A stretch of DNA of 58,174 bases from Salisapilia sapeloensis CBS 127946 (lineage: Eukaryota; Protista; Oomycota). The notes beneath the pieces are model-generated. The model worked only from the letters and a program-made list of their open reading frames with translations, did no database searches and was not told the DNA's origin. The translations under genes and the position numbers were made by a program. The stretch is taken from the NCBI GenBank assembly GCA_023334545.1, contig JAADVB010000107.1, positions 1 through 58,174 of the forward strand. Direction: 5' to 3'. Of this stretch, positions 641 through 39,332 are shown piece by piece (position 1 is the first letter of the stretch; every line of letters begins with the position of its first letter).

Positions 641-3091
641 ATGCCGAATCTTCTCTTCTTCACACTGGCCACCGGTCTAGTCTTGACCAACTTTACGACC
701 TGGGCGACACTCTACGATGGTGGCTGGAGTCAGTTTGGCTGGCATGCTCAACACAGCTCGAATAAGAACGGTGGATGGGGCGAAAACGTCTTTGGTTGGG
801 GAGACGGAGGTGATGTTGCAGCTATCAATCAACGTGCATCGGACATTGTGCTGGGCTACACGGATGCTCAAGTGCTCGGCCAAATGACCCAAATTGATAT
901 TGGACAAGTGATGACTCCTGATAAGCAACTGGATGAAGACAAGATGCGAGAGTTTGCGAGAAAGCATGTCGGCTCGTACCTGAACACACCATGGACGGAG
1001 CCTATTGACGGCAAGTATGGATGGACCTCGGAAGAGTGGCGCGCGATCATTGCTCAAATGCAACTAATCACGTTGGAGGAGAATCCTGGTCAACCGTTAG
1101 TCTTCGGGATAGATTCTGTCCACGGAGCCAACTACGTGACGGATGCTGTTCTTTTCCCACAGCAGATTAACTTCGGTGCGACCTTCAATGCCGATCTCGT
1201 GTATCAAGCCTCCAAGTTTGCTGCATCTGACACTGCAGCCTCCGGTATGCACTGGATCTTTGGACCGATCGCTGACATCCAGCAGAATCCGCTGTGGGCT
1301 CGTACCTACGAGACATTCAGCGAAGACACGTACTTGACATCTGTGCTCATTGACGCCGCCGTGAGTGGTTTCCAAGAGAACAATGCCACTGCTGCTTGCT
1401 TGAAACACTTCATCGGGTACTCAGGCACGTCAACGGGTAACGATCGAACGGATGTGTCGCTCTCGAACTTTGACCTCCTCAACTACTTCATGCCACCATT
1501 TAAGGCGGGGATGGATGCAGGAACCTACACAGTCATGGAGTCGTACAGTTCGCTTAATGGAGTCCCTGTGGTCACGAGTACGAAGATTCTACGCGACTTG
1601 ATTCGTAAAGACCTGGACTACGATGGTGTGGTCGTCACGGACTGGCAAGAGATTGAAAACCTGCACTTGTACCACAAAGTTGCGTCGAGTGAGACGGAAG
1701 CTGTTCGCATGGCACTGACCCGAACGACGCTTGATATGAGCATGGTCCCGTACTCGACCGCGTTCATCGAGCAAGGAGAAGAGCTGCTAGCGGCATACCC
1801 ACAGTACATCGAAAGACTGCGAACGTCAGCACGTCGCATTGTCAAGATGAAGTTGATGCTTGGGCTGTACGATGAATCGGTCGCATCCAATGAAGACGAG
1901 AGCTACTCAGTCGGTAATCAGGAATCACAAGATGTCGCTTTGCAAGCTGCTCGCGAGTCGATCGTGCTGCTTCAGAACAACGACAGCAGTCTTCCCATCC
2001 CGGATGGATCCACTGTCTTCTTAACTGGACCAAACGCAGACGACATTGGTCGACAGTGCGGCGGTTGGACGTTGCGCTGGCAAGGGTACTCTGGTAACGA
2101 CATGTTTAGTCATGGGCAGTCGATCTACAGAGCCATGAAATCCATGGGAGACGACCGAATGGCCGTGTCGTACTTCAATGGCTTGCCCATCGACGGGTCC
2201 TACTCGGATGCGAACATGTCGACGGCTAAAGCATTGGCGGATGTGAACGAGTACACCGTTGTCGTTATTGGCGAAGATACCTACACGGAGAAGCCTGGCG
2301 ATATTCCCGACTTAGCTCTGCCTGGTGGACAGATCGAATATGTGAAGGAACTCGCATCTACCGGCACAAAGGTCATTGCCGTTTTCCTCGGTGGACGCCC
2401 TCGACTGCTGAACGGTCTAACCGAGTACGTCCATGCGTTCATCTATGGAATGCTACCGTGTGAATTTGGCGGTCAAGCCATCGCGGAGATTCTCGCCGGT
2501 GACGTCAACCCGAGTGGTAAGCTACCTCTGACTTACCCGAAAGACCCTGCGAACGTTGGCGTCAAGTACAACCACCTTGTCAACTTGAAGTGCAAGGATG
2601 AATACTGCGAGCCTCAATGGAAGTTTGGAGCAGGTCTCAGCTACACGACCTTTACTTATTCTCCGCTGCGCTTGAGCCATACCGAGGTGAGCTCCAATGA
2701 CGACAAGGTCATTGCAGAAGTGACGGTCACGAATTCGGGAGACAATGATGGGTATGAAACAGTCATGCTCTTCCTCACACAGACCTATCGGTCCATCTCG
2801 GTGCCTGAAGTGAAGATGCTGAAGAAGTTCACGAAGATTTTCCTCAAGGCTGGCGAGTCGGAAGTGGTAGAGTTCGAGCTCACGAAGAACGATTGGAGCG
2901 TGTATGATCCTCAGATTGGTGACGGACTAAAGACGACTGCCGAGGACGGACAGTTTGTCGTGAGCGTGCAGGCTGAAACGGATTGCGACGTCTACGGATT
3001 CATTGTCGATGAACGATGCGCAACATTCACGCTTCGTCGAGGCGAGCCCCCATTTCCGATTGAAGCGGAAGATCCTACGGTGACCTACTAA
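641..3091 (+). CDS. Secreted glycoside hydrolase family 3 beta-glucosidase
   Basis: Intronless 816-aa ORF with an N-terminal signal peptide. GH3 motifs FGIDSVHG, ACLKHFIGY and VVVTDW (nucleophile Asp), a C-terminal GH3 domain (VVVIGEDTYTEKPGD, GKLPLTYP) and an Fn3-like tail (ETVMLFL...LKKFTKIFL). Confidence 0.93.
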   Translation: MPNLLFFTLATGLVLTNFTTWATLYDGGWSQFGWHAQHSSNKNGGWGENVFGWGDGGDVAAINQRASDIVLGYTDAQVLGQMTQIDIGQVMTPDKQLDEDKMREFARKHVGSYLNTPWTEPIDGKYGWTSEEWRAIIAQMQLITLEENPGQPLVFGIDSVHGANYVTDAVLFPQQINFGATFNADLVYQASKFAASDTAASGMHWIFGPIADIQQNPLWARTYETFSEDTYLTSVLIDAAVSGFQENNATAACLKHFIGYSGTSTGNDRTDVSLSNFDLLNYFMPPFKAGMDAGTYTVMESYSSLNGVPVVTSTKILRDLIRKDLDYDGVVVTDWQEIENLHLYHKVASSETEAVRMALTRTTLDMSMVPYSTAFIEQGEELLAAYPQYIERLRTSARRIVKMKLMLGLYDESVASNEDESYSVGNQESQDVALQAARESIVLLQNNDSSLPIPDGSTVFLTGPNADDIGRQCGGWTLRWQGYSGNDMFSHGQSIYRAMKSMGDDRMAVSYFNGLPIDGSYSDANMSTAKALADVNEYTVVVIGEDTYTEKPGDIPDLALPGGQIEYVKELASTGTKVIAVFLGGRPRLLNGLTEYVHAFIYGMLPCEFGGQAIAEILAGDVNPSGKLPLTYPKDPANVGVKYNHLVNLKCKDEYCEPQWKFGAGLSYTTFTYSPLRLSHTEVSSNDDKVIAEVTVTNSGDNDGYETVMLFLTQTYRSISVPEVKMLKKFTKIFLKAGESEVVEFELTKNDWSVYDPQIGDGLKTTAEDGQFVVSVQAETDCDVYGFIVDERCATFTLRRGEPPFPIEAEDPTVTY

Positions 3092-32214: not shown

Positions 32215-33552
32215 TTGCCTATTTTTCGATTTTGTGTTGGCATATGTGTCATTCCACACATTGCCATACAACCTGGTTACTGGTAAGGATATAGATTCCT
32301 CCCCAAAGCATGCTCTTCACGAAGCCTTTTAGACTGCTAACAGTGATTCAAAGTCACTCTGCTGTCGTTTTTATTAGCAATTCATGCATGTTACTCGTTC
32401 TTACTCATATATACCTTTGAAACGCCATTATTGTACAAGTGGACTACTTGCTAAAGGATAAGAATCTACCCCAAGTAGCCATTCAAAGCAAAACTCCCTT
32501 TATATAATTCTAACACTATATTAGCTGCGAGGATCAGCAGCATTATTCTCCACGCACCAGCCTTTGCCATAGGAAAGATTCAAGCATAAATTAACTGCCA
32601 TATGAGGCTCTTTACATTCAAAGACCCAGTCCGAATGTTTGATTCTGCATCAATCATTTTAAAGTGAGGCTGGCGACGGTAATATCAGCTTAAATGATAC
32701 CTCGTCAACTAAATACGAAATGAATCATATTGAAGAAGCATGAAAGCATCTGAGCAATGTGTGTCAAAGTCAAATGACCAGAAATCAGCAAACGCAGAGT
32801 CGGATGATCCGAGTTACCATAAATACGCATCCCGAGCGTGGCTCCTCAGTTTTAACACATAGCGAGTCAGTGTGAGCATAGTCCAAGCATTGTAGTAGTA
32901 TGGCTTTTCCGCATGCGATAAAGTGTCGGCAGTGACTACTGGTGTCGTGGACAAAGATGCGTTTGCGTCTATGAAAGCAGTGGTTTACATCAACAAAAGC
33001 TCTTTCTAAGACGTCAAAGGAGTCATGTTTTGCGTTGGATGGGTAAATGGTAGCGAGTAGTCTGGTTTGATGGCACTTAGTACTTCAATGTCATTCGCAA
33101 ATGCCAAACTTGCTACCCGGGATAGATAACAAACTTGAACCCCAACTTACCATGCTTTATCAGTCATTCTGTGGTGTTACGTTGTGTCTATTTGAAGAGA
33201 TTATGCCCATCAAACAACCTCCTCGTAGTGATCGCAGGGTGATTATCAATATTAAGATTACTGTATCGTGGCAAGTAAAGATTCGAAATTTGACTTGTGA
33301 TGCTCACTGGGATAGTTTGATTCTAGAACGCATAACGCAGCGTATTGGTGGCAAACACTTAAAGCTTTCGACAAGAAGAGGACATCTAGCAACATGAATT
33401 GCATTATGTACCAGACTGACAAATCTCGTGCTTGAGAGAGCTTCGTCAGCTCCGCACATCGAAACCATATAAAAACATCCATCATATATTTAATACACAT
33501 TCAGAGCGTATAAATAGTCACTTATACATGGATTCGTTCTATCGTAAATGAG

Positions 33553-36348
33553 ATGTCCGTATCTCAAATACTTGAATGCGAGCGAAGACAAATGAGTATG
33601 GGTGATAACGATGCTGTTTTTGCCCACCTACACTCGTCTCCACTAGTGGTACGACGCCAAGGAGCTGCTCCAAAGGACTTGGCTCTACTGCGCAACCCAA
33701 GCTCTGGTTCAATCCCTTCCGTGCCTCGTCGCACGTCGTCCATGTCGTCTTCATCTTCCGGATCGTCTGAAGTCGATGACACTTTCTTGGGCGCTCGCAG
33801 TGGATTGGAGCCAGTGGAGATCATCGACGTGAAGGAAGAGAGACGACTACTTATACAGTGTCTCCGGGAAGCTCATCGACGCGTTGTTTGGCGGACGGAA
33901 GTGGCGGATCTTCACACATTTCGCAAAGTACTGAGCTACGGCTGTCGAGCGCTGCATTTCTCCGGCCATGGTGTTCCAGGTCGTGTCATTTTCGAGAATG
34001 CAAAAGGAGAGGCTCAGTTCCTCTGTCAGGACGAACTACGCGAGCTTTTATTGGCAGGAGGTAGGACAAGGAAGACAAAGGACACTGGAAATGTCACGTG
34101 TAGCGGCAGTTTCATGCAACAGCTTAATGCACTTATGGCAAAGAAGTGCCAGGCTTTTAGTCAGGACAGCTTAGTGGAAGCAGAGAGTCTAGCGAGGGAG
34201 ACAGAACGGATATCTCTGCAGGATCCTACTCGTATTAAGAACACAGAACCGCCGATGCGTTTGGTCTTCGTAAGTGCTTGTCACTCTGAAAGCGTAGCGT
34301 CCGCTTTCGTAGCAGTAGGTGTTCCTCATGTCGTCGTCGTGTCACGGAACGACAAGGTGCTGGATAAGACAGCCATGGAATTCTCGAAAGCCTTTTACAC
34401 TGCACTCTTCGCCGGCCATGAAGTCGACCGAGCGTTCGAGATCGGACAAGTGCAGGCAGATCTGGCTGCTGGCGCTTTCAATTCAAGTGATTCTAGTCAT
34501 CACCATCACACCAAGTCTGGACGTTTTAAACTTCTAGGCAACGGCGACCACAGTGAAAGACTGTTCAAGGACTTGACTCCAGGCGAGTTTATCACGCAGT
34601 CGCCATCTCTCCCGACGAACGAGTGTGACGCCGTGGCAGAAGTCTTTGTCGGTCGGTCACTAGAAGTCCACAGCGCATACAAGTCACTCGTGGAAGGCGC
34701 TCGTCTCGTTAGTATCACAGGAGAGTTTGGCATTGGTAAAACTGAAGTCGCTCTGCAATGTGCTCAGTACGCGACGGAGCGTCGCATTTTCCAACACATC
34801 TTTTTCCTTACATTCGACTCTAGATGCGACACTGACAGCACCAACTTTGTCGCTCGATTCGCTAAAGCGTTGCATGTACCGGCCTCAGGAGACTGCTATG
34901 ACGATTTTGCTGATGCTGTGAGGTTTAAATACGCCGAAGACGGCAAGTTCCTGCTCGTGCTGGACGGATGCAACCGTGTCATTCGTCAAAACAATGCTTT
35001 CCGTCGTATCATTCGCCTCTTGCTTCGAAGAGTAAGTTCGTTAGCTATACTCGTCACAGGAGACGGTAAGATAGGCGGTATGGATGGCGTTGGGGAGAAG
35101 ATAGTGGCGATCGATCGGATGCCGCCACTAGACGCTGCTCTGCTCTTCACGCTCCGAGCGCCACGGAAGATCAAGGCGCATGAAATGGGTGACAGTCCGG
35201 ACTTGGCTGCCTTTGGAGAGCATCCAGTCATTAAGAAAGTAGATGGCCATCCGCGAGCTATTTGCGCCGTATCCCAGTTCCTCGACCATAAGGACATGGA
35301 ACTGGATCAGCACGAGTTTTTGAATTACATTATTCCCTCCGTCAACGTCGGATTGCGCTCCTGCAGTTCATCCTCCATCGATACGTTGTCTGACACGAAT
35401 TCTAAAGAGTCCATGAACACAAGCATGTCCACTCCTACGTCACATTCAGATCTACTGCCGCACGGGAGCAGTAGCGGTAGTTGGAAGTCGTCTGCTTCGA
35501 GTGCCGACATCCTCGTTGATCGTCATCCTCTGCGCAAAAGTTTGAGTGAGCGATCTTCTCGAAGTGACTCGGAGCTAAGGAGCCACATATCATCTACTCC
35601 TCAAGCTTCTGTCGTTCAAATGTGCATCACCAAGGTGGCCGAAGACGCCATCCAGACGGTGGAAAGTTGGGAGGCAAGTGGTATGTGGGCGTTTGCCGTC
35701 ATTGAAAGCTTTGGAAAAGATCAGCTCGAGTCTTCTAATGAGTGCATTACTCGGCTGTTACAGATCGAGAGAGTACCCATGCAATACCTCGCTGTGCAGC
35801 TCTGCCGATACTTTGCCATCCAGTTGAAAGGTGACGCTGTCAAGCGGCCATTGTCCCTTCGAAGTATTGAGTTTCTAGTTCAGAGCGCTTGTATCTGGGG
35901 TGTCACGTCTCCACCGTCGACAGCTCCGAAGAAACATGTGACGAAAAGGATGTTTGCCTGCTTTTGGAAGTGGTTCGAGCCACTGACGGAAGCTATTGTC
36001 GCATCTGGACTGTGGGGATATACCCAGCCTCGCTTACTCCATGGCTTTCTCTCCAAGAGTGCGACGATCAATATGCTGCAGAAGGCGCCTCCTGGTACCT
36101 TTTTACTACGATGCAGTGAAACGAGACAACGGTGCATCGTCATTGCGTACGTGCATGACGACGGAAATGTGCAGTTTGTGCCTGTGACGTACCAAAAGGA
36201 GGAAGGAAGGTGGTTTGTTGAGCTGCAGAAGCAACGTCGCGGAGTCACGTTTGCGACGATAACGGAGCTTATACTGAGTGTGTCCGTACTCAAAGTTCTT
36301 TTCCCGTACACGCCAAAGGAGACTGCGTTTCCAAGTTTTCTCAACTGA
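33553..36348 (+). CDS. CHAT (caspase-like) protease + NB-ARC/STAND ATPase + STAT-type linker-SH2 protein
   Basis: LHFSGHG (H139) and LVFVSACHS (C243) CHAT dyad. Walker A GEFGIGKT (390-397), Walker B LLVLDG (D471), ILVTG and GHPRAI (GLPL-like). C-terminal FWKWF...LHGFLSK...PGTFLLRCSE (R853) SH2. Intronless. Confidence 0.88.
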   Translation: MSVSQILECERRQMSMGDNDAVFAHLHSSPLVVRRQGAAPKDLALLRNPSSGSIPSVPRRTSSMSSSSSGSSEVDDTFLGARSGLEPVEIIDVKEERRLLIQCLREAHRRVVWRTEVADLHTFRKVLSYGCRALHFSGHGVPGRVIFENAKGEAQFLCQDELRELLLAGGRTRKTKDTGNVTCSGSFMQQLNALMAKKCQAFSQDSLVEAESLARETERISLQDPTRIKNTEPPMRLVFVSACHSESVASAFVAVGVPHVVVVSRNDKVLDKTAMEFSKAFYTALFAGHEVDRAFEIGQVQADLAAGAFNSSDSSHHHHTKSGRFKLLGNGDHSERLFKDLTPGEFITQSPSLPTNECDAVAEVFVGRSLEVHSAYKSLVEGARLVSITGEFGIGKTEVALQCAQYATERRIFQHIFFLTFDSRCDTDSTNFVARFAKALHVPASGDCYDDFADAVRFKYAEDGKFLLVLDGCNRVIRQNNAFRRIIRLLLRRVSSLAILVTGDGKIGGMDGVGEKIVAIDRMPPLDAALLFTLRAPRKIKAHEMGDSPDLAAFGEHPVIKKVDGHPRAICAVSQFLDHKDMELDQHEFLNYIIPSVNVGLRSCSSSSIDTLSDTNSKESMNTSMSTPTSHSDLLPHGSSSGSWKSSASSADILVDRHPLRKSLSERSSRSDSELRSHISSTPQASVVQMCITKVAEDAIQTVESWEASGMWAFAVIESFGKDQLESSNECITRLLQIERVPMQYLAVQLCRYFAIQLKGDAVKRPLSLRSIEFLVQSACIWGVTSPPSTAPKKHVTKRMFACFWKWFEPLTEAIVASGLWGYTQPRLLHGFLSKSATINMLQKAPPGTFLLRCSETRQRCIVIAYVHDDGNVQFVPVTYQKEEGRWFVELQKQRRGVTFATITELILSVSVLKVLFPYTPKETAFPSFLN

Positions 36349-37895
36349 GCAAGACAAGTCTGATTTTATGTAATATGAAAAGTGTTCAAACAAGATTAAA
36401 TTCGGTCACGTGTGTCTGAGCTTCTGACAAGTAGTAATATTTTAGCAACGAGTTTCCACGTATCCTCGTATTCTTCAAAGCGTCATTGTCGTTTTTAATA
36501 AATTCTTATGCTGAGTGAAAAGATACCTAAATAAAGTATCTTTTATTGATAGTCCCTAGACAATTTTTAAAACTAGGCTAGCCTCTTTATGCGTGGAATT
36601 AAATGCCCGATTCTACCTTTATCATGAACTGTACTTACTACTTGCCGTCAATTAAGCAAATGTCTACAACTTATTATTGCAAATCGACTTATAAAGCAAA
36701 AGTTTATCAAAGCAAGTAATAATTTCCACAGCTTTCATTATCATGTACATTTCTCGCTCTTCATCGATCGCCTTATCATGCTGAGGAAACGCCAACTTTC
36801 GGAGTTCCTCGAGTAACCGAATTTCATATCGCAGATCGAATCGTGCAAATATGTCGTGGCAGAGAACTTTTAGACCTACACTGCAAATGAAAAGCTTTTT
36901 ATTTTCTACTATCGAACTCGTCTAGTCGAGAAAAGTCCGTCATACTGTAGCTTGACCAACGTTGACCTGAGCACTAGATGATAAATGAGTTCAGAACGAA
37001 TGTACTGGCAAACTAAGAACAGCTTCAATTGTTGGAAGAAGGATACAATTGGTCCTCCATTATCCATGCACCAAGCTCTACATGTTGATACAGCAACACG
37101 TTTGCAGAATGAAGTAGATAAAACCACTAAAGCAGGAAGTCGTACTAGCGGACTTCAAGTTGACGGTCATGTCTCACAAATTTCTTTCAACTTCACATGT
37201 CCTCTTCGTCTTATTCGTCGCTTTTTATATAGGACAGTAAAAGTAACCGAAGTGGTCATTAACGTTTCCCGCCGTCTCCGCGTGTGGCGCGTGATGCGCA
37301 TCACTAGCTTTCCCCAGCCTATATGAATAAACTTCAGTCTATCAATTCAATGATTGCAAGCACCCATTTTTCTTCATCTACATTTTCGGTTGTACCTTGT
37401 GAAGTAAGCCTAAGGAGCGAGGAAGAGCTCGCTCCATTTAAACTGATGAAGTAGCGCTACCCCTCGAAGGATGAATTCACTTGGCTTGACTATGCCTCGA
37501 CATGCTGAATCGTCAGCATCGCTTTGTGATCCAGTCATATAATTCAAAGCGGGAAAGAAGAGTTTGTGGAGCCGCGAGACTTTTGAACATACGCCCACAC
37601 GCTTTCGAGATACGTCGACAAACATCCCTCCAGACATTCTGTACGACCCTGCACGACAAAGGTACATGTCTTTCCTATCACGAGATAAATCATGCTCGTC
37701 CGTACGAGCTCTCGCTTTCATCCCGCCGCTTGTGCTACGTGCGCCACGCACCAAGTGTTGGCACTTGTCGATTAACTCATGATCGCATGTCATTTTCCAT
37801 GGAACTTATAACTGGATCCAATACACTCGAAACTAGTCATGCACAATGCACAATACACAATACACTGGTACTAATGCATACGAATCCATAGGAAA

Positions 37896-39332
37896 ATGAC
37901 TTGTGAAACTGAGAAAACACCAGAAGAGGTGCCAGCGAGTCCGGACCAGGAGAACGAGGCCGCACTGAGCAACACGACGCTCGACTCGCAGTCAGAGGAC
38001 ATGCCGGTCAAGCAAGAAGGGTCAAATAACATTGACCCAGAAGAGACAGCCATGATTCTCACCTCCCTTTCCAAGCCTGGAGGCAAGACGATGCCGGACC
38101 GGAAAGCCAAGGGCAAGAAGAAGGTCACACCAGCTAAGCGGAAGCGCGCCGCCAAGCCCGAACCAAAGAACAAGAAGGTTCGTGCCGAGTCGGAGGAAGA
38201 AGACGCGTTCGACCGCGAGAGCCATCGCATCGGACAGGTCAACTTTGACGGTCCCGAAGGCAAGAAACTCGACTTTACCGACGCTCAGGGGAATGCCCAC
38301 TCATTCCATAAAGAGAGCAACCGTGTCAAGAGTCTCGTGACGAGTCAAATCGGTCTAGACGAGCTCCGTAGGCACTTTGATCGTCCGATTCTCGACGTCG
38401 CCAAGGACTTTGGCGTCTGCATCACGCTCATGAAGAAGATCTGTCGTCGCAACGGCATCAACCGGTGGCCGCATCGTCAGATCCGATCTATTTCCAAAAG
38501 CATTGCGTCCATGGAAGCCGCCCTGCTCTCTGCTTCCGGTCCAGAGAAGGCTCGGTACCGACAACAAATCGACTTTCTTCGTCAAAAGCGAGAGTTGGTG
38601 ATCAGCGATCCGAGTGCGCATGCCGAAGCGCCTGGATCGTCAGTCCCGAAGAACAAGCCGACGAAGACGTATCGGAAGAAGACGCCTAGGGAAAAGGAGG
38701 AAAGTGGTGAGAAGAATGCGTCGAAAGGTGGACGATGGACAGCTGAGGAACACGCTGCTTTTCTTGAAGGCATCCGTCTCTACGGAAAGGAGTGGAGGAG
38801 GGTCGCACAGGTGGTCAAGACCCGATCGGCCGTACAGACCCGGACGCACGCGCAAAAGTATTTGCTTAAATTCGCAGGCTCGAACCGCTTTGACGCTCCT
38901 TCGCCTGCGATTCTCGGAGGAAATTTCCCTGTGGATAAGCAAGAGCCGACGGAATCGTACACGAGTATGATGAGCGACGGCAAGGAAGAGAGGGACGATA
39001 CGTTTGCGTTCGATTTGTCAGCGTATGCGTCAACGATGCCTGCCGATGGCGACAATGGATCCAACGGAGACGGCATTCCGAGTCTGACGATCGGCATCTC
39101 GTCGCTCGAGTCGGACCCGACGAACATGCAGCTTCAGGACGACAACGCCTCGGCCGGAACGGAGGAAGAAGCTCCCGTTCGGTCTCCGCCAAAGGAAGCT
39201 ATGGCGATGATTTTGAATAGCCCCGAGTTTCGGTCGCAGGCGTTCCAGGACTCGATGAGCGGGAACGAGCGCAAGCAGATGGAGGAACCGCTGACGTTGT
39301 CCGAGTCGCACGAGATGGCGGACCTCGTTTGA
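37896..39332 (+). CDS. RWP-RK + SHAQKYF-class Myb double DNA-binding transcription factor
   Basis: IGLDELRRHFDRPILDVAKDFGVCITLMKKICRRNGINRWPHRQI (RWP-RK) and GRWTAEEHAAFLEGIRLYGKEWRRVAQVVKTRSAVQTRTHAQKY (Myb). Lys/Arg-rich NLS-like segments. Confidence 0.9.
   Translation: MTCETEKTPEEVPASPDQENEAALSNTTLDSQSEDMPVKQEGSNNIDPEETAMILTSLSKPGGKTMPDRKAKGKKKVTPAKRKRAAKPEPKNKKVRAESEEEDAFDRESHRIGQVNFDGPEGKKLDFTDAQGNAHSFHKESNRVKSLVTSQIGLDELRRHFDRPILDVAKDFGVCITLMKKICRRNGINRWPHRQIRSISKSIASMEAALLSASGPEKARYRQQIDFLRQKRELVISDPSAHAEAPGSSVPKNKPTKTYRKKTPREKEESGEKNASKGGRWTAEEHAAFLEGIRLYGKEWRRVAQVVKTRSAVQTRTHAQKYLLKFAGSNRFDAPSPAILGGNFPVDKQEPTESYTSMMSDGKEERDDTFAFDLSAYASTMPADGDNGSNGDGIPSLTIGISSLESDPTNMQLQDDNASAGTEEEAPVRSPPKEAMAMILNSPEFRSQAFQDSMSGNERKQMEEPLTLSESHEMADLV

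What the first reader, a model, noticed from the sequence alone, without database searches (positions are those of the whole stretch)
33553..36348. NLR-like protein with a caspase-like CHAT effector, NB-ARC switch and an SH2 module in place of sensor repeats
Seen: CHAT dyad H139 (HFSGHG) and C243 (VSACHS); a full NB-ARC motif set (Walker A 390-397, Walker B D471, ILVTG, GHP 565-567); a Ser-rich linker; then a STAT-type linker-SH2 with the pTyr-binding Arg (R853). No LRR, TPR, WD40 or ankyrin repeats. Established: STAND ATPases (Apaf-1/CED-4, NLRs, bacterial Avs) oligomerise to activate N-terminal effectors, and CHAT-STAND proteins occur in fungal and bacterial immunity and cell death. Inference: a phosphotyrosine-triggered protease switch that couples kinase signalling to regulated proteolysis or cell death in oomycetes. 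I know of no characterised example of this architecture, but could not search.
Basis: partly seen in the sequence, partly recalled or inferred. Interest (0 to 1): 0.9.

Follow-up and report, generated by a model that had tools for sequence, protein, structure and literature searches.

The report
Caspase-like protease switch with SH2 sensor
This oomycete gene encodes a caspase-like protease joined to an NLR-type ATP-binding switch and a STAT-type phosphotyrosine-binding SH2 module, an uncharacterised design that is shared by many stramenopile and rhizarian protists and appears to derive from bacterial defence-like proteins.

Summary
ORF 33553-36348 (+) is intact, intronless and transcribed. It encodes three modules.

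- **CHAT protease:** the His139/Cys243 dyad aligns with the mutation-validated dyad of SAVED-CHAT (8TL0, Z 24.6).
- **STAND NTPase:** its nearest relatives are AfsR, CED-4, Apaf-1 and plant NB-ARC domains.
- **STAT-type linker plus SH2:** STAT6 is hit at E 7e-15 (Z 14), and the phosphate pocket is intact (K835, R853, S855, E856, T857).

"Full NB-ARC" overstates the case. Only the nucleotide-binding domain and first helical domain (ARC1) are present; there is no winged helix or MHD motif. Oomycete orthologues have also lost the Walker-B-proximal acid (N474) and the sensor-1 Arg (D504), so I predict ATP binding with poor hydrolysis.

The architecture is not confined to oomycetes. It occurs in brown, xanthophyte and chrysoparadoxophyte algae and in Cercozoa. 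The sister proteins are bacterial CHAT-STAND-TPR proteins, so the linker-SH2 sits where their TPR arm sits.

The gene appears to be single copy (not systematically checked) and strongly conserved, which argues for signalling rather than arms-race immunity. The most likely mechanism is phosphotyrosine-dependent recruitment or oligomerisation that activates the protease; this is untested. No paper found describes it. Other first-stage notes cover this same stretch, not other DNA.

The parts
33553..36348 (+). Complete single-exon ORF (931 codons plus stop) encoding the CHAT-STAND-linker-SH2 protein
   Evidence: Orthologues cover 97% of it. RNA contigs are colinear with no gaps.
33553..36403 (+). 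Transcribed region seen in RNA-run contigs. The 5' ends lie at 33553/33573/33577 and the 3' ends at 36396-36403, about 50 nt after the stop.
   Evidence: table 8. Flanking bins 32600-33404 and 36464-36624 have zero RNA depth.
33592..33600 (+). Met14 and Met16 codons (the stretch covers codons 14-16), the probable true start. The protein would then be 918 or 916 aa.
   Evidence: Two of three RNA contigs begin after the first ATG. Orthologues begin 2-4 residues before the conserved FAHLHSSPLV. Sequence read.
33610..34584 (+). CHAT (caspase-fold cysteine protease) domain, aa 20-344
   Evidence: Pfam PF12770 at 37.5 bits. In the AF2 model with pLDDT 85.5, aa 20-344 align to the SAVED-CHAT filament 8tl0_A at Z 24.6, rmsd 2.1 over 195 residues. 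The profile hits 8tl0 at E 5.5e-17.
33967..33969 (+). Catalytic His139 (SGHG)
   Evidence: His in 117/119 family members. It aligns with SAVED-CHAT H375, which was validated by mutation.
34060..34257 (+). Variable insert between catalytic His and Cys (aa 170-235). It has low confidence and is absent in Saprolegniales orthologues.
   Evidence: Alignment; pLDDT 50-69.
34279..34281 (+). Catalytic Cys243 (SAC)
   Evidence: Cys in 115/119 family members. It aligns with SAVED-CHAT C422.
34600..35370 (+). STAND NTPase module, aa 350-606: nucleotide-binding domain plus first helical domain (ARC1/HD1). No winged-helix domain follows.
   Evidence: VIA gives ZAR1 152-411, CED-4 113-384, NRC4 and Apaf-1 at Z 16-18, and the top 24 rows are all AP-ATPase/NB-ARC proteins. 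The profile hits AfsR at E 1.2e-14. AFDB hits Rv0894, AfsR, GutR and plant NLRs.
34645..34665 (+). hhGRExE-type motif FVGRSLE (aa 365-371) preceding the P-loop strand
   Evidence: G367 and R368 are invariant or nearly so. Naming the motif rests on established NB-ARC literature.
34720..34743 (+). Walker A GEFGIGKT (aa 390-397)
   Evidence: G395 is invariant and K396 is Lys in 113/119.
34951..34974 (+). Walker B LLVLDGCN (aa 467-474). D471 is kept, but the +3 acidic residue is Asn474.
   Evidence: Position 474 is D/E in 23/23 TPR-type relatives and 25/29 non-oomycete SH2-type relatives, but N in 14/15 oomycete sequences.
35047..35064 (+). Sensor-1 strand ILVTGD (aa 499-504). The family's Arg at 504 is Asp here.
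   Evidence: R in 20/23 TPR-type relatives; D/T/I in oomycetes.
35245..35253 (+). GxP motif GHP (aa 565-567) of the helical domain, equivalent to GLPL
   Evidence: It aligns to AfsR 'flPLAI'. G565 and H566 are invariant in orthologues.
35359..35598 (+). Ser-rich, poorly conserved, length-variable disordered linker (aa 603-682)
   Evidence: pLDDT under 50; alignment.
35599..36027 (+). STAT-type helical linker domain (aa 683-825), including the invariant R765 and the FWKWF junction helix
   Evidence: VIA aligns 682..931 to STAT5a 459-684, STAT3 439-687, STAT6 403-630 and Dictyostelium STATa 489-691 at Z about 14. Relatives hit Pfam STAT_linker and EF-hand_12 below their cut-offs.
36028..36327 (+). 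STAT-type SH2 domain (aa 826-925)
   Evidence: Pfam SH2 at 26.9 bits. PDB searches give STAT6 at E 1.6e-6 with the single sequence and 6.9e-15 with the profile, against 1.8e-4 for the best Src-type SH2.
36109..36111 (+). Arg853, the betaB5 phosphotyrosine-binding arginine
   Evidence: R in 37/37 oomycete and 46/48 non-oomycete SH2-type sequences. K835, S855, E856 and T857 are likewise conserved.

Best explanation
The gene encodes a conserved signalling protease built from three modules. It appears to be single copy per species. At the N-terminus is a CHAT caspase-fold cysteine protease with an intact His139/Cys243 dyad. In the middle is a STAND/NB-ARC-like nucleotide-binding oligomerisation module reduced to NBD+HD1. 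After a disordered Ser-rich tether comes a STAT-type linker-SH2 unit with an intact phosphotyrosine pocket.

Most likely mechanism (inferred): the SH2 unit occupies the place of the TPR sensor arm of the bacterial ancestors. It docks on a phosphotyrosine motif of another protein, since the protein has no conserved tyrosine tail of its own. Docking concentrates or releases the ATP-bound NOD so that it oligomerises. The CHAT domains become active through proximity and ordering, as in SAVED-CHAT filaments and apoptosomes, and then cleave a limited set of substrates.

In oomycetes the NOD has lost the residues needed for hydrolysis. Nucleotide probably serves as a structural cofactor, and the regulated step has moved to phosphotyrosine recognition.
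For: **Shown**
- The ORF is intact and transcribed.
- CHAT fold and dyad: 8tl0 at Z 24.6 and E 5.5e-17. The family His and Cys align to H375/C422, whose mutation kills SAVED-CHAT, and SAVED-CHAT is switched on by ligand-induced filament formation. His and Cys are kept in 117 and 115 of 119 relatives.
- The NOD is nearest to AfsR, CED-4, Apaf-1 and plant NLRs. Walker A Lys and Walker B Asp are conserved.
- The linker-SH2 is STAT-type. The pocket residues K835, R853, S855, E856 and T857 are conserved family-wide.
- In the tree of the CHAT-NTPase cassette, SH2-type proteins lie on one side of a 95% SH-aLRT branch from the TPR-type and N-terminally extended proteins (not all of these were shown to be bacterial or eukaryotic), and a single SH2 clade is not rejected (p-AU 0.735). 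The TPR-type is bacterial in the cases checked.
- No conserved Tyr lies outside the folded domains.

**Context**
- Phytophthora has two putative tyrosine kinases, 139 TKLs and only four SH2 proteins (PMC3019232).
- Dictyostelium TKLs phosphorylate STATs on tyrosine (PMC4196871 abstract).
Against: - No biochemical data exist for any member.
- Without a winged-helix domain or MHD motif, the usual STAND autoinhibition and oligomerisation geometry may not apply.
- Loss of the Walker-B-proximal acid and the sensor-1 Arg could mean the NOD is only a static scaffold.
- SH2 domains outside animals do not always bind phosphotyrosine; Spt6 is an example (general knowledge).
- The full-length AF2 model gives no reliable inter-module packing (pTM 0.36). 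Autoinhibition by the SH2 unit is therefore pure inference.
- The ligand is unknown.
Confidence: 0.45

Rival explanations
1. Phosphotyrosine-directed proteolysis. The SH2 unit does not gate activity. It acts as a targeting module that brings an otherwise competent (or nucleotide-regulated) protease to tyrosine-phosphorylated substrates or scaffolds. This would terminate or convert a signal, as Cbl's SH2-containing TKB domain directs an E3 ligase to phosphotyrosine proteins.
For: The long disordered tether (aa 603-682) between NOD and SH2 suits a reach-and-capture module. The C-terminal profile also hits Cbl TKB EF-hand/SH2 at E 0.002-0.05. The hydrolysis residues are degenerate, so the NOD may not be the regulated element. 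The pocket is intact.
Against: CHAT proteases characterised so far (SAVED-CHAT, and TPR-CHAT from general knowledge) are tightly switched rather than constitutive. The CHAT-NOD cassette is conserved as a unit across hundreds of clusters, which suggests the NOD controls the protease.
Confidence: 0.25
2. An innate-immunity or cell-death executor of the NLR/Avs type. It would detect non-self (virus, mycoparasite, incompatible hyphae) and kill the cell by proteolysis.
For: The cassette descends from, or is sister to, bacterial CHAT-STAND-TPR proteins of the kind found in conflict systems. Its best structural relatives are apoptosome and resistosome NODs and a CRISPR-associated protease. Eukaryotic cousins carry SPRY/LRR arms typical of immune sensors.
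Against: There is apparently one orthologue per oomycete species; paralogues were not systematically searched. Identity is 48-59% over aligned columns (42-56% by BLASTP) from Saprolegniales to Peronosporales, with dozens of invariant residues. There is no repeat arm, no family expansion and no sign of diversification. An SH2 reads an endogenous kinase mark rather than a pathogen molecule.
Confidence: 0.12
3. The SH2 fold is retained but does not read phosphotyrosine. It would bind phosphoserine/threonine, an acidic peptide or an internal segment, so the protein is a STAND protease regulated by Ser/Thr phosphorylation or by nucleotide alone.
For: The linker before the SH2 unit is very Ser-rich. 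Oomycetes have few dedicated tyrosine kinases. Some ancient SH2 domains such as Spt6 bind pSer/pThr (general knowledge).
Against: All five positions that contact the phosphate in STAT3 (K591, R609, S611, E612, S613 from general knowledge) are matched and conserved. The domain is STAT-type by about 10 orders of E-value over other SH2 classes.
Confidence: 0.1
4. A non-catalytic scaffold: the CHAT domain is a pseudoprotease, and the protein merely assembles a phosphotyrosine signalling complex.
For: There is no direct evidence of activity, and the NOD catalytic residues are already degenerate.
Against: His139 and Cys243, with their flanking SGHG and SAC(H)S motifs, are invariant in all oomycete orthologues and kept in more than 96% of 119 relatives.
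Confidence: 0.05

Closest known systems
SAVED-CHAT protease of the Haliangium ochraceum type III-B CRISPR/CBASS hybrid (PDB 8TL0)
   Same: It is the best structural and sequence match for the protease domain (Z 24.6, rmsd 2.1; profile E 5.5e-17). The catalytic His and Cys sit in the same motifs. It is a CHAT protease switched on by oligomerisation of an attached sensor module.
   Different: Its sensor is a cyclic-oligoadenylate-binding SAVED domain placed N-terminal to CHAT. It has no NTPase and no SH2, it is bacterial, and it has a known substrate (PCaspase).
Apaf-1/CED-4 apoptosomes and plant NLR resistosomes (NB-ARC STAND ATPases)
   Same: The NBD+HD1 fold matches (Z 16-18), with hhGRExE-like, Walker A, Walker B and GxP motifs. 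An N-terminal effector is followed by a NOD and then a C-terminal ligand-reading module. The logic of proximity-activated (caspase) proteases is shared.
   Different: Here the protease is fused in cis rather than recruited through CARD. There is no winged-helix/ARC2 domain, MHD motif or HD2. There are no WD40 or LRR repeats. The Walker-B-proximal acid and sensor-1 Arg are lost in oomycetes.
Bacterial CHAT-STAND-TPR proteins (e.g. Thermoanaerobaculia MAG protein HXU31953.1; P0093 on a 258-kb bacterial contig) and AfsR-type NB-ARC-TPR regulators
   Same: The whole CHAT+NTPase cassette is homologous at about 30% identity, with E 1e-50 to 1e-77 for the family profile. The domain order is the same. 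The AfsR NOD is the best solved sequence relative of the NTPase (E 1.2e-14).
   Different: Their C-terminal arm is made of TPR repeats and they keep the Walker B +3 acid and the sensor-1 Arg. They are uncharacterised themselves. AfsR has a DNA-binding SARP effector rather than a protease.
STAT transcription factors (STAT6, STAT3, STAT5, Dictyostelium STATa)
   Same: The linker domain and SH2 form one unit, with the FWxWF junction helix, the GTFLLRFSE motif and the phosphate-contact residues.
   Different: There is no N-terminal domain, coiled coil or DNA-binding domain, and no C-terminal tyrosine or transactivation tail. The protein ends about 6-9 residues after the end of the SH2.
Cbl tyrosine-kinase-binding domain (four-helix, EF-hand, SH2) coupled to a RING E3
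   Same: This is a functional analogy. An EF-hand-like/SH2 unit steers an enzymatic effector to phosphotyrosine proteins. The profile similarity is weak (E 0.002-0.05). One relative carries a Pfam Cbl_N2 hit (P0056).
   Different: The effector is a ubiquitin ligase rather than a protease, there is no NTPase, and the SH2 lies N-terminal to the effector.

Membership tests
CHAT / clan CD caspase-fold cysteine proteases (Pfam PF12770) | Sequence match above the family's curated threshold | tested here: met
   37.5 bits against a cut-off of 24, aa 65-296.
CHAT / clan CD caspase-fold cysteine proteases (Pfam PF12770) | Catalytic His-Cys dyad in the GHG and (S/A)AC motifs | tested here: met
   H139 and C243 are invariant in orthologues and align with SAVED-CHAT H375/C422.
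CHAT / clan CD caspase-fold cysteine proteases (Pfam PF12770) | Caspase-hemoglobinase fold | tested here: met
   In the AF2 model with pLDDT 85.5, aa 20-344 align to 8tl0_A at Z 24.6, rmsd 2.1.
CHAT / clan CD caspase-fold cysteine proteases (Pfam PF12770) | Proteolytic activity | not testable with these tools
   Needs an enzyme assay.
STAND NTPases, AP-ATPase/NB-ARC clade | P-loop NBD with Walker A GxxxxGK[TS] and Walker B hhhhD | tested here: met
   GEFGIGKT 390-397 and LLVLD 467-471, both conserved.
STAND NTPases, AP-ATPase/NB-ARC clade | hhGRExE motif and helical domain 1 (ARC1) with GxP/GLPL motif | tested here: met
   FVGRSLE 365-371. GHP 565-567 aligns to the AfsR PLA motif. The fold matches ZAR1, CED-4 and Apaf-1 NBD+HD1.
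STAND NTPases, AP-ATPase/NB-ARC clade | Pfam NB-ARC (PF00931) match above threshold | tested here: not met
   There is no PF00931 hit at E <= 1 for this protein; AAA_16 and NACHT score below their cut-offs. Relatives pass NB-ARC (P0107 at 46.6 bits) or NACHT (P0064 at 41 bits).
STAND NTPases, AP-ATPase/NB-ARC clade | Winged-helix domain (ARC2) carrying the MHD-type His that clamps ADP | tested here: not met
   Structural alignments stop at the HD1/WHD border (ZAR1 411, CED-4 384-387). Residues 603-682 are disordered and unconserved, and 682-931 is STAT linker+SH2. Several eukaryotic relatives end 0-70 residues after HD1.
STAND NTPases, AP-ATPase/NB-ARC clade | Catalytic acid next to Walker B and sensor-1 Arg for hydrolysis | tested here: not met
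   N474 and D504 in oomycetes, against D/E and R in the bacterial TPR-type relatives.
NLR (NOD + leucine-rich or other repeat sensor) | C-terminal repeat sensor arm (LRR, TPR, WD40, ankyrin) | tested here: not met
   No repeat family hits at E <= 1. The C-terminus is linker-SH2.
SH2 domain (PF00017), STAT-type | Sequence match above threshold, and closer to STAT than to Src-type SH2 | tested here: met
   26.9 bits against a cut-off of 21. STATs score E 7e-15 to 6e-9, against 1.8e-4 for the best Src-type.
SH2 domain (PF00017), STAT-type | betaB5 Arg and the other phosphate-contact residues | tested here: met
   R853, K835, S855, E856 and T857 are conserved in 37/37 oomycete sequences and most of 48 other sequences.
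SH2 domain (PF00017), STAT-type | Phosphotyrosine peptide binding | not testable with these tools
   Needs a binding assay.
STAT transcription factors | Coiled-coil and DNA-binding domains N-terminal to the linker-SH2 | tested here: not met
   The N-terminal 600 residues are CHAT and NTPase. Structural matches to STATs cover only the linker+SH2.
STAT transcription factors | C-terminal tyrosine phosphorylation site for reciprocal SH2 dimerisation | tested here: not met
   The protein ends at ...PKETAFPSFLN. The only invariant tyrosines are Y282 and Y406, both inside folded domains.

The most novel reading that the evidence does not exclude
CHAT-STAND-linker-SH2 proteins form an ancient signalling axis shared by stramenopiles and rhizarians. 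A bacterial conflict-system protease switch was domesticated by swapping its TPR sensor for a STAT-type SH2. Tyrosine phosphorylation is then read out directly as regulated proteolysis, a phosphotyrosine output unknown in animals.

In oomycetes the ATPase has become a non-hydrolysing scaffold. The missing TPR arm may be supplied in trans by the separate SH2+TPR adaptor with acidic YxxF motifs that other first-stage notes report in this genome. That adaptor is untested here.
Probability: 0.25. Interest if true: 0.85.

Novelty: new variant of a known kind. Interest (0 to 1): 0.72.

Why it matters
SH2 and phosphotyrosine signalling is usually treated as a holozoan and amoebozoan invention, and its role in stramenopiles is essentially unknown; Phytophthora has only four SH2 proteins. 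This protein ties one of them to a caspase-like protease through an NLR-type oligomerisation module.

That gives a concrete, testable output for tyrosine phosphorylation in oomycetes, brown algae and Cercozoa. It is also a clear case of a bacterial STAND-protease cassette being rewired in eukaryotes by swapping the sensor. Finally, it offers a natural experiment on what a NOD does without a winged helix and without hydrolysis residues.

Because the gene appears to be single copy and conserved in all sampled oomycetes, including major plant and animal pathogens, its biology is likely to be core rather than accessory.

Tried and rejected
1. The first AF2 run, on the full length with 19 orthologues, gave pLDDT under 50 for the whole CHAT domain. 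I solved this by building a 119-sequence alignment of the CHAT+NTPase cassette from the representative search, which gave pLDDT 85.5.
With P0094 it returned only that protein's own 3.9-kb MAG contig and two TPR-only hits. I therefore established bacterial origin from the 258-kb contig of P0093 instead.
3. A word-index search restricted to aa 685-931, meant to find other linker-SH2 architectures such as an SH2+TPR adaptor, returned only orthologues.
4. A profile search with non-oomycete SH2-type members added one named taxon (Scytosiphon).
5. Literature searches combining SH2, CHAT, STAND, NACHT, oomycete, Phytophthora and stramenopiles found no description of the architecture. Liu et al. 2011 (Sci Signal, PMC4255630), the SH2 census most likely to mention it, is not held.
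6. I considered classifying the NTPase as NACHT, because it has Pfam sub-threshold hits, a D-G-x-[DE] Walker B and a T-S-R sensor-1 consensus. I did not adopt this as the primary call, because the profile-to-PDB search and the structural ranking put AfsR, CED-4, Apaf-1 and plant NB-ARC first. The clade assignment within STAND stays open.
7. I rejected the idea that it is a STAT: the DNA-binding and coiled-coil domains and the tyrosine tail are absent.
8. The ESM Atlas search of the C-terminal part only re-found SH2/STAT_linker clusters.


Full report
**Gene model**

The window holds an uninterrupted 931-codon ORF at 33553-36348 on the + strand. Logan contigs from three RNA runs of the same organism lie colinear on it with no gaps. 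They span 33553-36397, 33573-36396 and 33577-36403. The flanking bins have zero RNA depth, and the DNA run covers everything evenly. The run types are the tool's guesses.

The gene is therefore transcribed as a single exon with a 3' UTR of about 50 nt. The contigs begin at or after the first ATG, and all orthologues begin two to four residues before the conserved FAHLHSSPLV. The real start is therefore probably Met14 (33592) or Met16 (33598).

**Check of the observation**

Pfam gives CHAT (37.5 bits, cut-off 24) and SH2 (26.9 bits, cut-off 21). It gives sub-threshold P-loop hits (AAA_16, NACHT, AAA_22, nSTAND3), no repeat family, and no NB-ARC hit.

**Protease**

With only 19 orthologues AlphaFold failed on the N-terminal third. 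I built a 119-sequence alignment of the CHAT+NTPase cassette from the exhaustive representative search. That gave a model of aa 20-610 with pLDDT 85.5 and pTM 0.85.

- Residues 20-344 superpose on the activated SAVED-CHAT filament (8tl0_A) at Z 24.6, rmsd 2.1 Å over 195 residues. This is far above every other row.
- The family profile hits the same chain at E 5.5e-17. In that alignment the family's GHG histidine and SAC cysteine fall on chain positions 355 and 402, which are H375 and C422 in the authors' numbering.
- The H375A/C422A double mutant is dead, and the enzyme is switched on by ligand-induced filament formation (bioRxiv 10.1101/2023.06.23.546230).
- His139 and Cys243 are invariant in oomycete orthologues and kept in 117 and 115 of 119 relatives.
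- A variable insert (aa 170-235) lies between them. It is absent in Saprolegniales.

**NTPase**

The evidence places this module in the AP-ATPase/NB-ARC-like part of STAND.

- Foldseek and VIA-align put plant NLR resistosomes (ZAR1, NRC2/3/4, Sr35, RPP1, Roq1), CED-4, Apaf-1 and Dark at the top, at Z 15-18. MalT (15.0) and ORC/Cdc6 (about 14) come below.
- The deep profile hits the NOD of the Streptomyces regulator AfsR at E 1.2e-14, then plant NLRs and Apaf-1.
- AlphaFold DB Swiss-Prot adds Rv0894/Rv0890c, AfsR and GutR.
- The motifs are an FVGRSLE (hhGRExE-like), the Walker A, the Walker B Asp, and a GHP that aligns with GLPL.

The module is incomplete, however.

- All structural alignments end at the HD1/winged-helix border (ZAR1 411, CED-4 384-387).
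- Residues 603-682 are Ser-rich, disordered, unconserved and variable in length.
- Residues 682-931 are entirely accounted for by the STAT linker and SH2. There is therefore no ARC2/WHD and no MHD motif.
- Several eukaryotic relatives end 0-70 residues after HD1, so this looks like a family trait.

Column statistics add a further point. The family's extended Walker B is D-[GN]-x-[DE]. The +3 acid is present in 23/23 TPR-type and 25/29 non-oomycete SH2-type members, but it is Asn in 14/15 oomycete sequences. The sensor-1 Arg, present in 20/23 TPR-type members, is Asp, Thr or Ile in oomycetes. I infer nucleotide binding with little hydrolysis. The Pfam NACHT-like flavour of these motifs means the clade assignment within STAND is not settled.

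**C-terminal unit**

- phmmer against PDB sequences finds only STATs (STAT6 at E 1.6e-6).
- A profile of the C-terminal 247 residues gives STAT6 at 6.9e-15, STAT3 at 2e-13 and Dictyostelium STATa at 6e-9. The best Src-type SH2 scores 1.8e-4 and Cbl TKB 0.002-0.05.
- Structurally, aa 682-931 align to STAT5a 459-684, STAT3 439-687, STAT6 403-630 and STATa 489-691 at Z about 14. That span is the linker domain plus the SH2.
- Relatives hit Pfam STAT_linker and EF-hand_12, both below their curated cut-offs.
- K835, R853, S855, E856 and T857 correspond to STAT3 K591, R609, S611, E612 and S613 (my knowledge of STAT3). They are conserved in 37/37 oomycete sequences. In 48 other SH2-type members, Arg853 is kept in 46, the alphaA basic residue in 39 and Ser855 in 45.
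- The protein stops about 6-9 residues after the end of the SH2. The only invariant tyrosines are Y282 and Y406, both inside folded domains, so any phosphotyrosine ligand must come in trans.

**Distribution and origin**

Full-length orthologues exist in Phytophthora, Peronospora, Nothophytophthora, Pythium, Globisporangium, Lagenidium, Aphanomyces, Saprolegnia, Achlya and Thraustotheca. BLASTP identity is 42-56%, or 48-59% over aligned columns. There appears to be one orthologue per species: the multiple hits per species look like alternative gene models, but I ran no paralogue search.

The exhaustive search found 7,003 proteins at E <= 1e-3 and 397 at E <= 1e-30. Among the listed hits the shared part is the CHAT+NTPase cassette.

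About 45 non-oomycete cluster representatives also end in the linker-SH2. The named ones are:

| Organism | Group |
|---|---|
| Ectocarpus, Scytosiphon | brown algae |
| Tribonema minus | xanthophyte |
| Chrysoparadoxa australica | chrysoparadoxophyte |
| Mataza sp. D1, Partenskyella glossopodia | Cercozoa |

Other relatives carry different arms:

- C-terminal TPR arrays. One such protein is in a Thermoanaerobaculia MAG. Another lies in a 258-kb contig among typical bacterial genes (RibD, dCTP deaminase, NadA, PQQ enzymes).
- A long SPRY-ARM-LRR N-terminal region, as in the labyrinthulomycete Mucochytrium quahogii.

In a maximum-likelihood tree of the cassette, a branch with 95% SH-aLRT support separates 62 TPR-type and N-terminally extended proteins from the 57 on the SH2 side. 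An AU test does not reject a single clade of all SH2-type proteins (p 0.735). The tree is unrooted, so the direction of transfer is inferred and not shown.

**Mechanism**

What is shown:
- a catalytically equipped CHAT domain of the kind activated by oligomerisation;
- an attached NOD able to bind nucleotide;
- a tethered STAT-type SH2 with an intact phosphate pocket, sitting where homologues carry a TPR sensor;
- strong purifying conservation.

What is inferred: the SH2 binds a phosphotyrosine motif in trans, this drives recruitment or oligomerisation, and that activates the protease. I give this 0.45.

The main rival (0.25) is that the SH2 only targets the protease to phosphorylated substrates, Cbl-fashion. 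An NLR-like immune or cell-death role (0.12) fits the ancestry but not the apparently single-copy, slowly evolving, repeat-less nature of the gene. A non-phosphotyrosine SH2 (0.10) and a pseudoprotease scaffold (0.05) are less likely given the conserved residues.

As context, Phytophthora has two putative tyrosine kinases, 139 TKLs and only four SH2 proteins (PMC3019232). In Dictyostelium, TKLs phosphorylate STATs on tyrosine (PMC4196871).

Unchecked first-stage notes report three other SH2 proteins in this genome. One is an EF-hand-like/SH2+TPR adaptor with five acidic YxxF motifs. It is an attractive candidate ligand or trans-acting sensor, but I could not reach that sequence.

**Novelty**

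Public databases label the orthologues only as hypothetical, 'SH2 domain-containing' or 'CHAT domain-containing'. Seven full-text searches found no paper describing the architecture. The 2011 SH2 census by Liu et al. could not be read.

STAND proteins with fused proteases, and with swapped sensor arms, are a known kind. An SH2 as the sensor arm, a NOD trimmed to NBD+HD1, and the range across stramenopiles and rhizarians are new variations. I rate it a new variant of a known kind, with interest 0.72.

Noticed in passing
window 37080-37320: RNA contigs from two runs end at 37320 and continue with the same 30 unmatched letters (TGTGAAGTAAGCC...). This looks like a splice donor. Depth here reaches 166 in run X4. 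It may be a 5' exon of the downstream RWP-RK/Myb gene (37896-39332) or a separate small, highly expressed gene.
   Followed up: no
window 33529-33552: An 8-codon mini-ORF (ATGGATTCGTTCTATCGTAAATGA) ends one base before the first ATG of the ORF. It lies outside all three RNA contigs, so it is probably promoter rather than a uORF.
   Followed up: partly
P0143 (Mucochytrium quahogii, 2466 aa) and P0101: These giant eukaryotic proteins have an N-terminal SPRY, GAT, armadillo and LRR region and end in the same CHAT-NB-ARC cassette. This is a reversed, sensor-first architecture, and it is uncharacterised.
   Followed up: partly
P0223, P0229 (metagenomic): These relatives of the cassette combine CHAT with LRR_6 repeats, and in P0223 also with a protein kinase domain.
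   Followed up: no
P0141 (Logan contig, 917 aa): This CHAT-NTPase relative shows two matched stretches for its Pfam SH2 hit, so it may have a tandem SH2. My own linker-SH2 HMM missed it.
   Followed up: no
P0054 (Ectocarpus, 1139 aa) residues about 1070-1139: Unlike the oomycete proteins, the brown-algal homologue has a tail of about 70 residues after the SH2, and the tail contains a tyrosine (..SLYPQP..). This could be a STAT-like self-ligand.
   Followed up: no
window 36735-36951: A short, low-depth RNA contig appears in one run (X3) in the otherwise silent spacer downstream of the gene.
   Followed up: no
P0048 (Logan contig, 821 aa): This sequence is sister to all named oomycete orthologues. 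It is the only member of that clade that keeps an acidic residue (Asp) at the Walker B +3 position. Its organism is unknown.
   Followed up: partly
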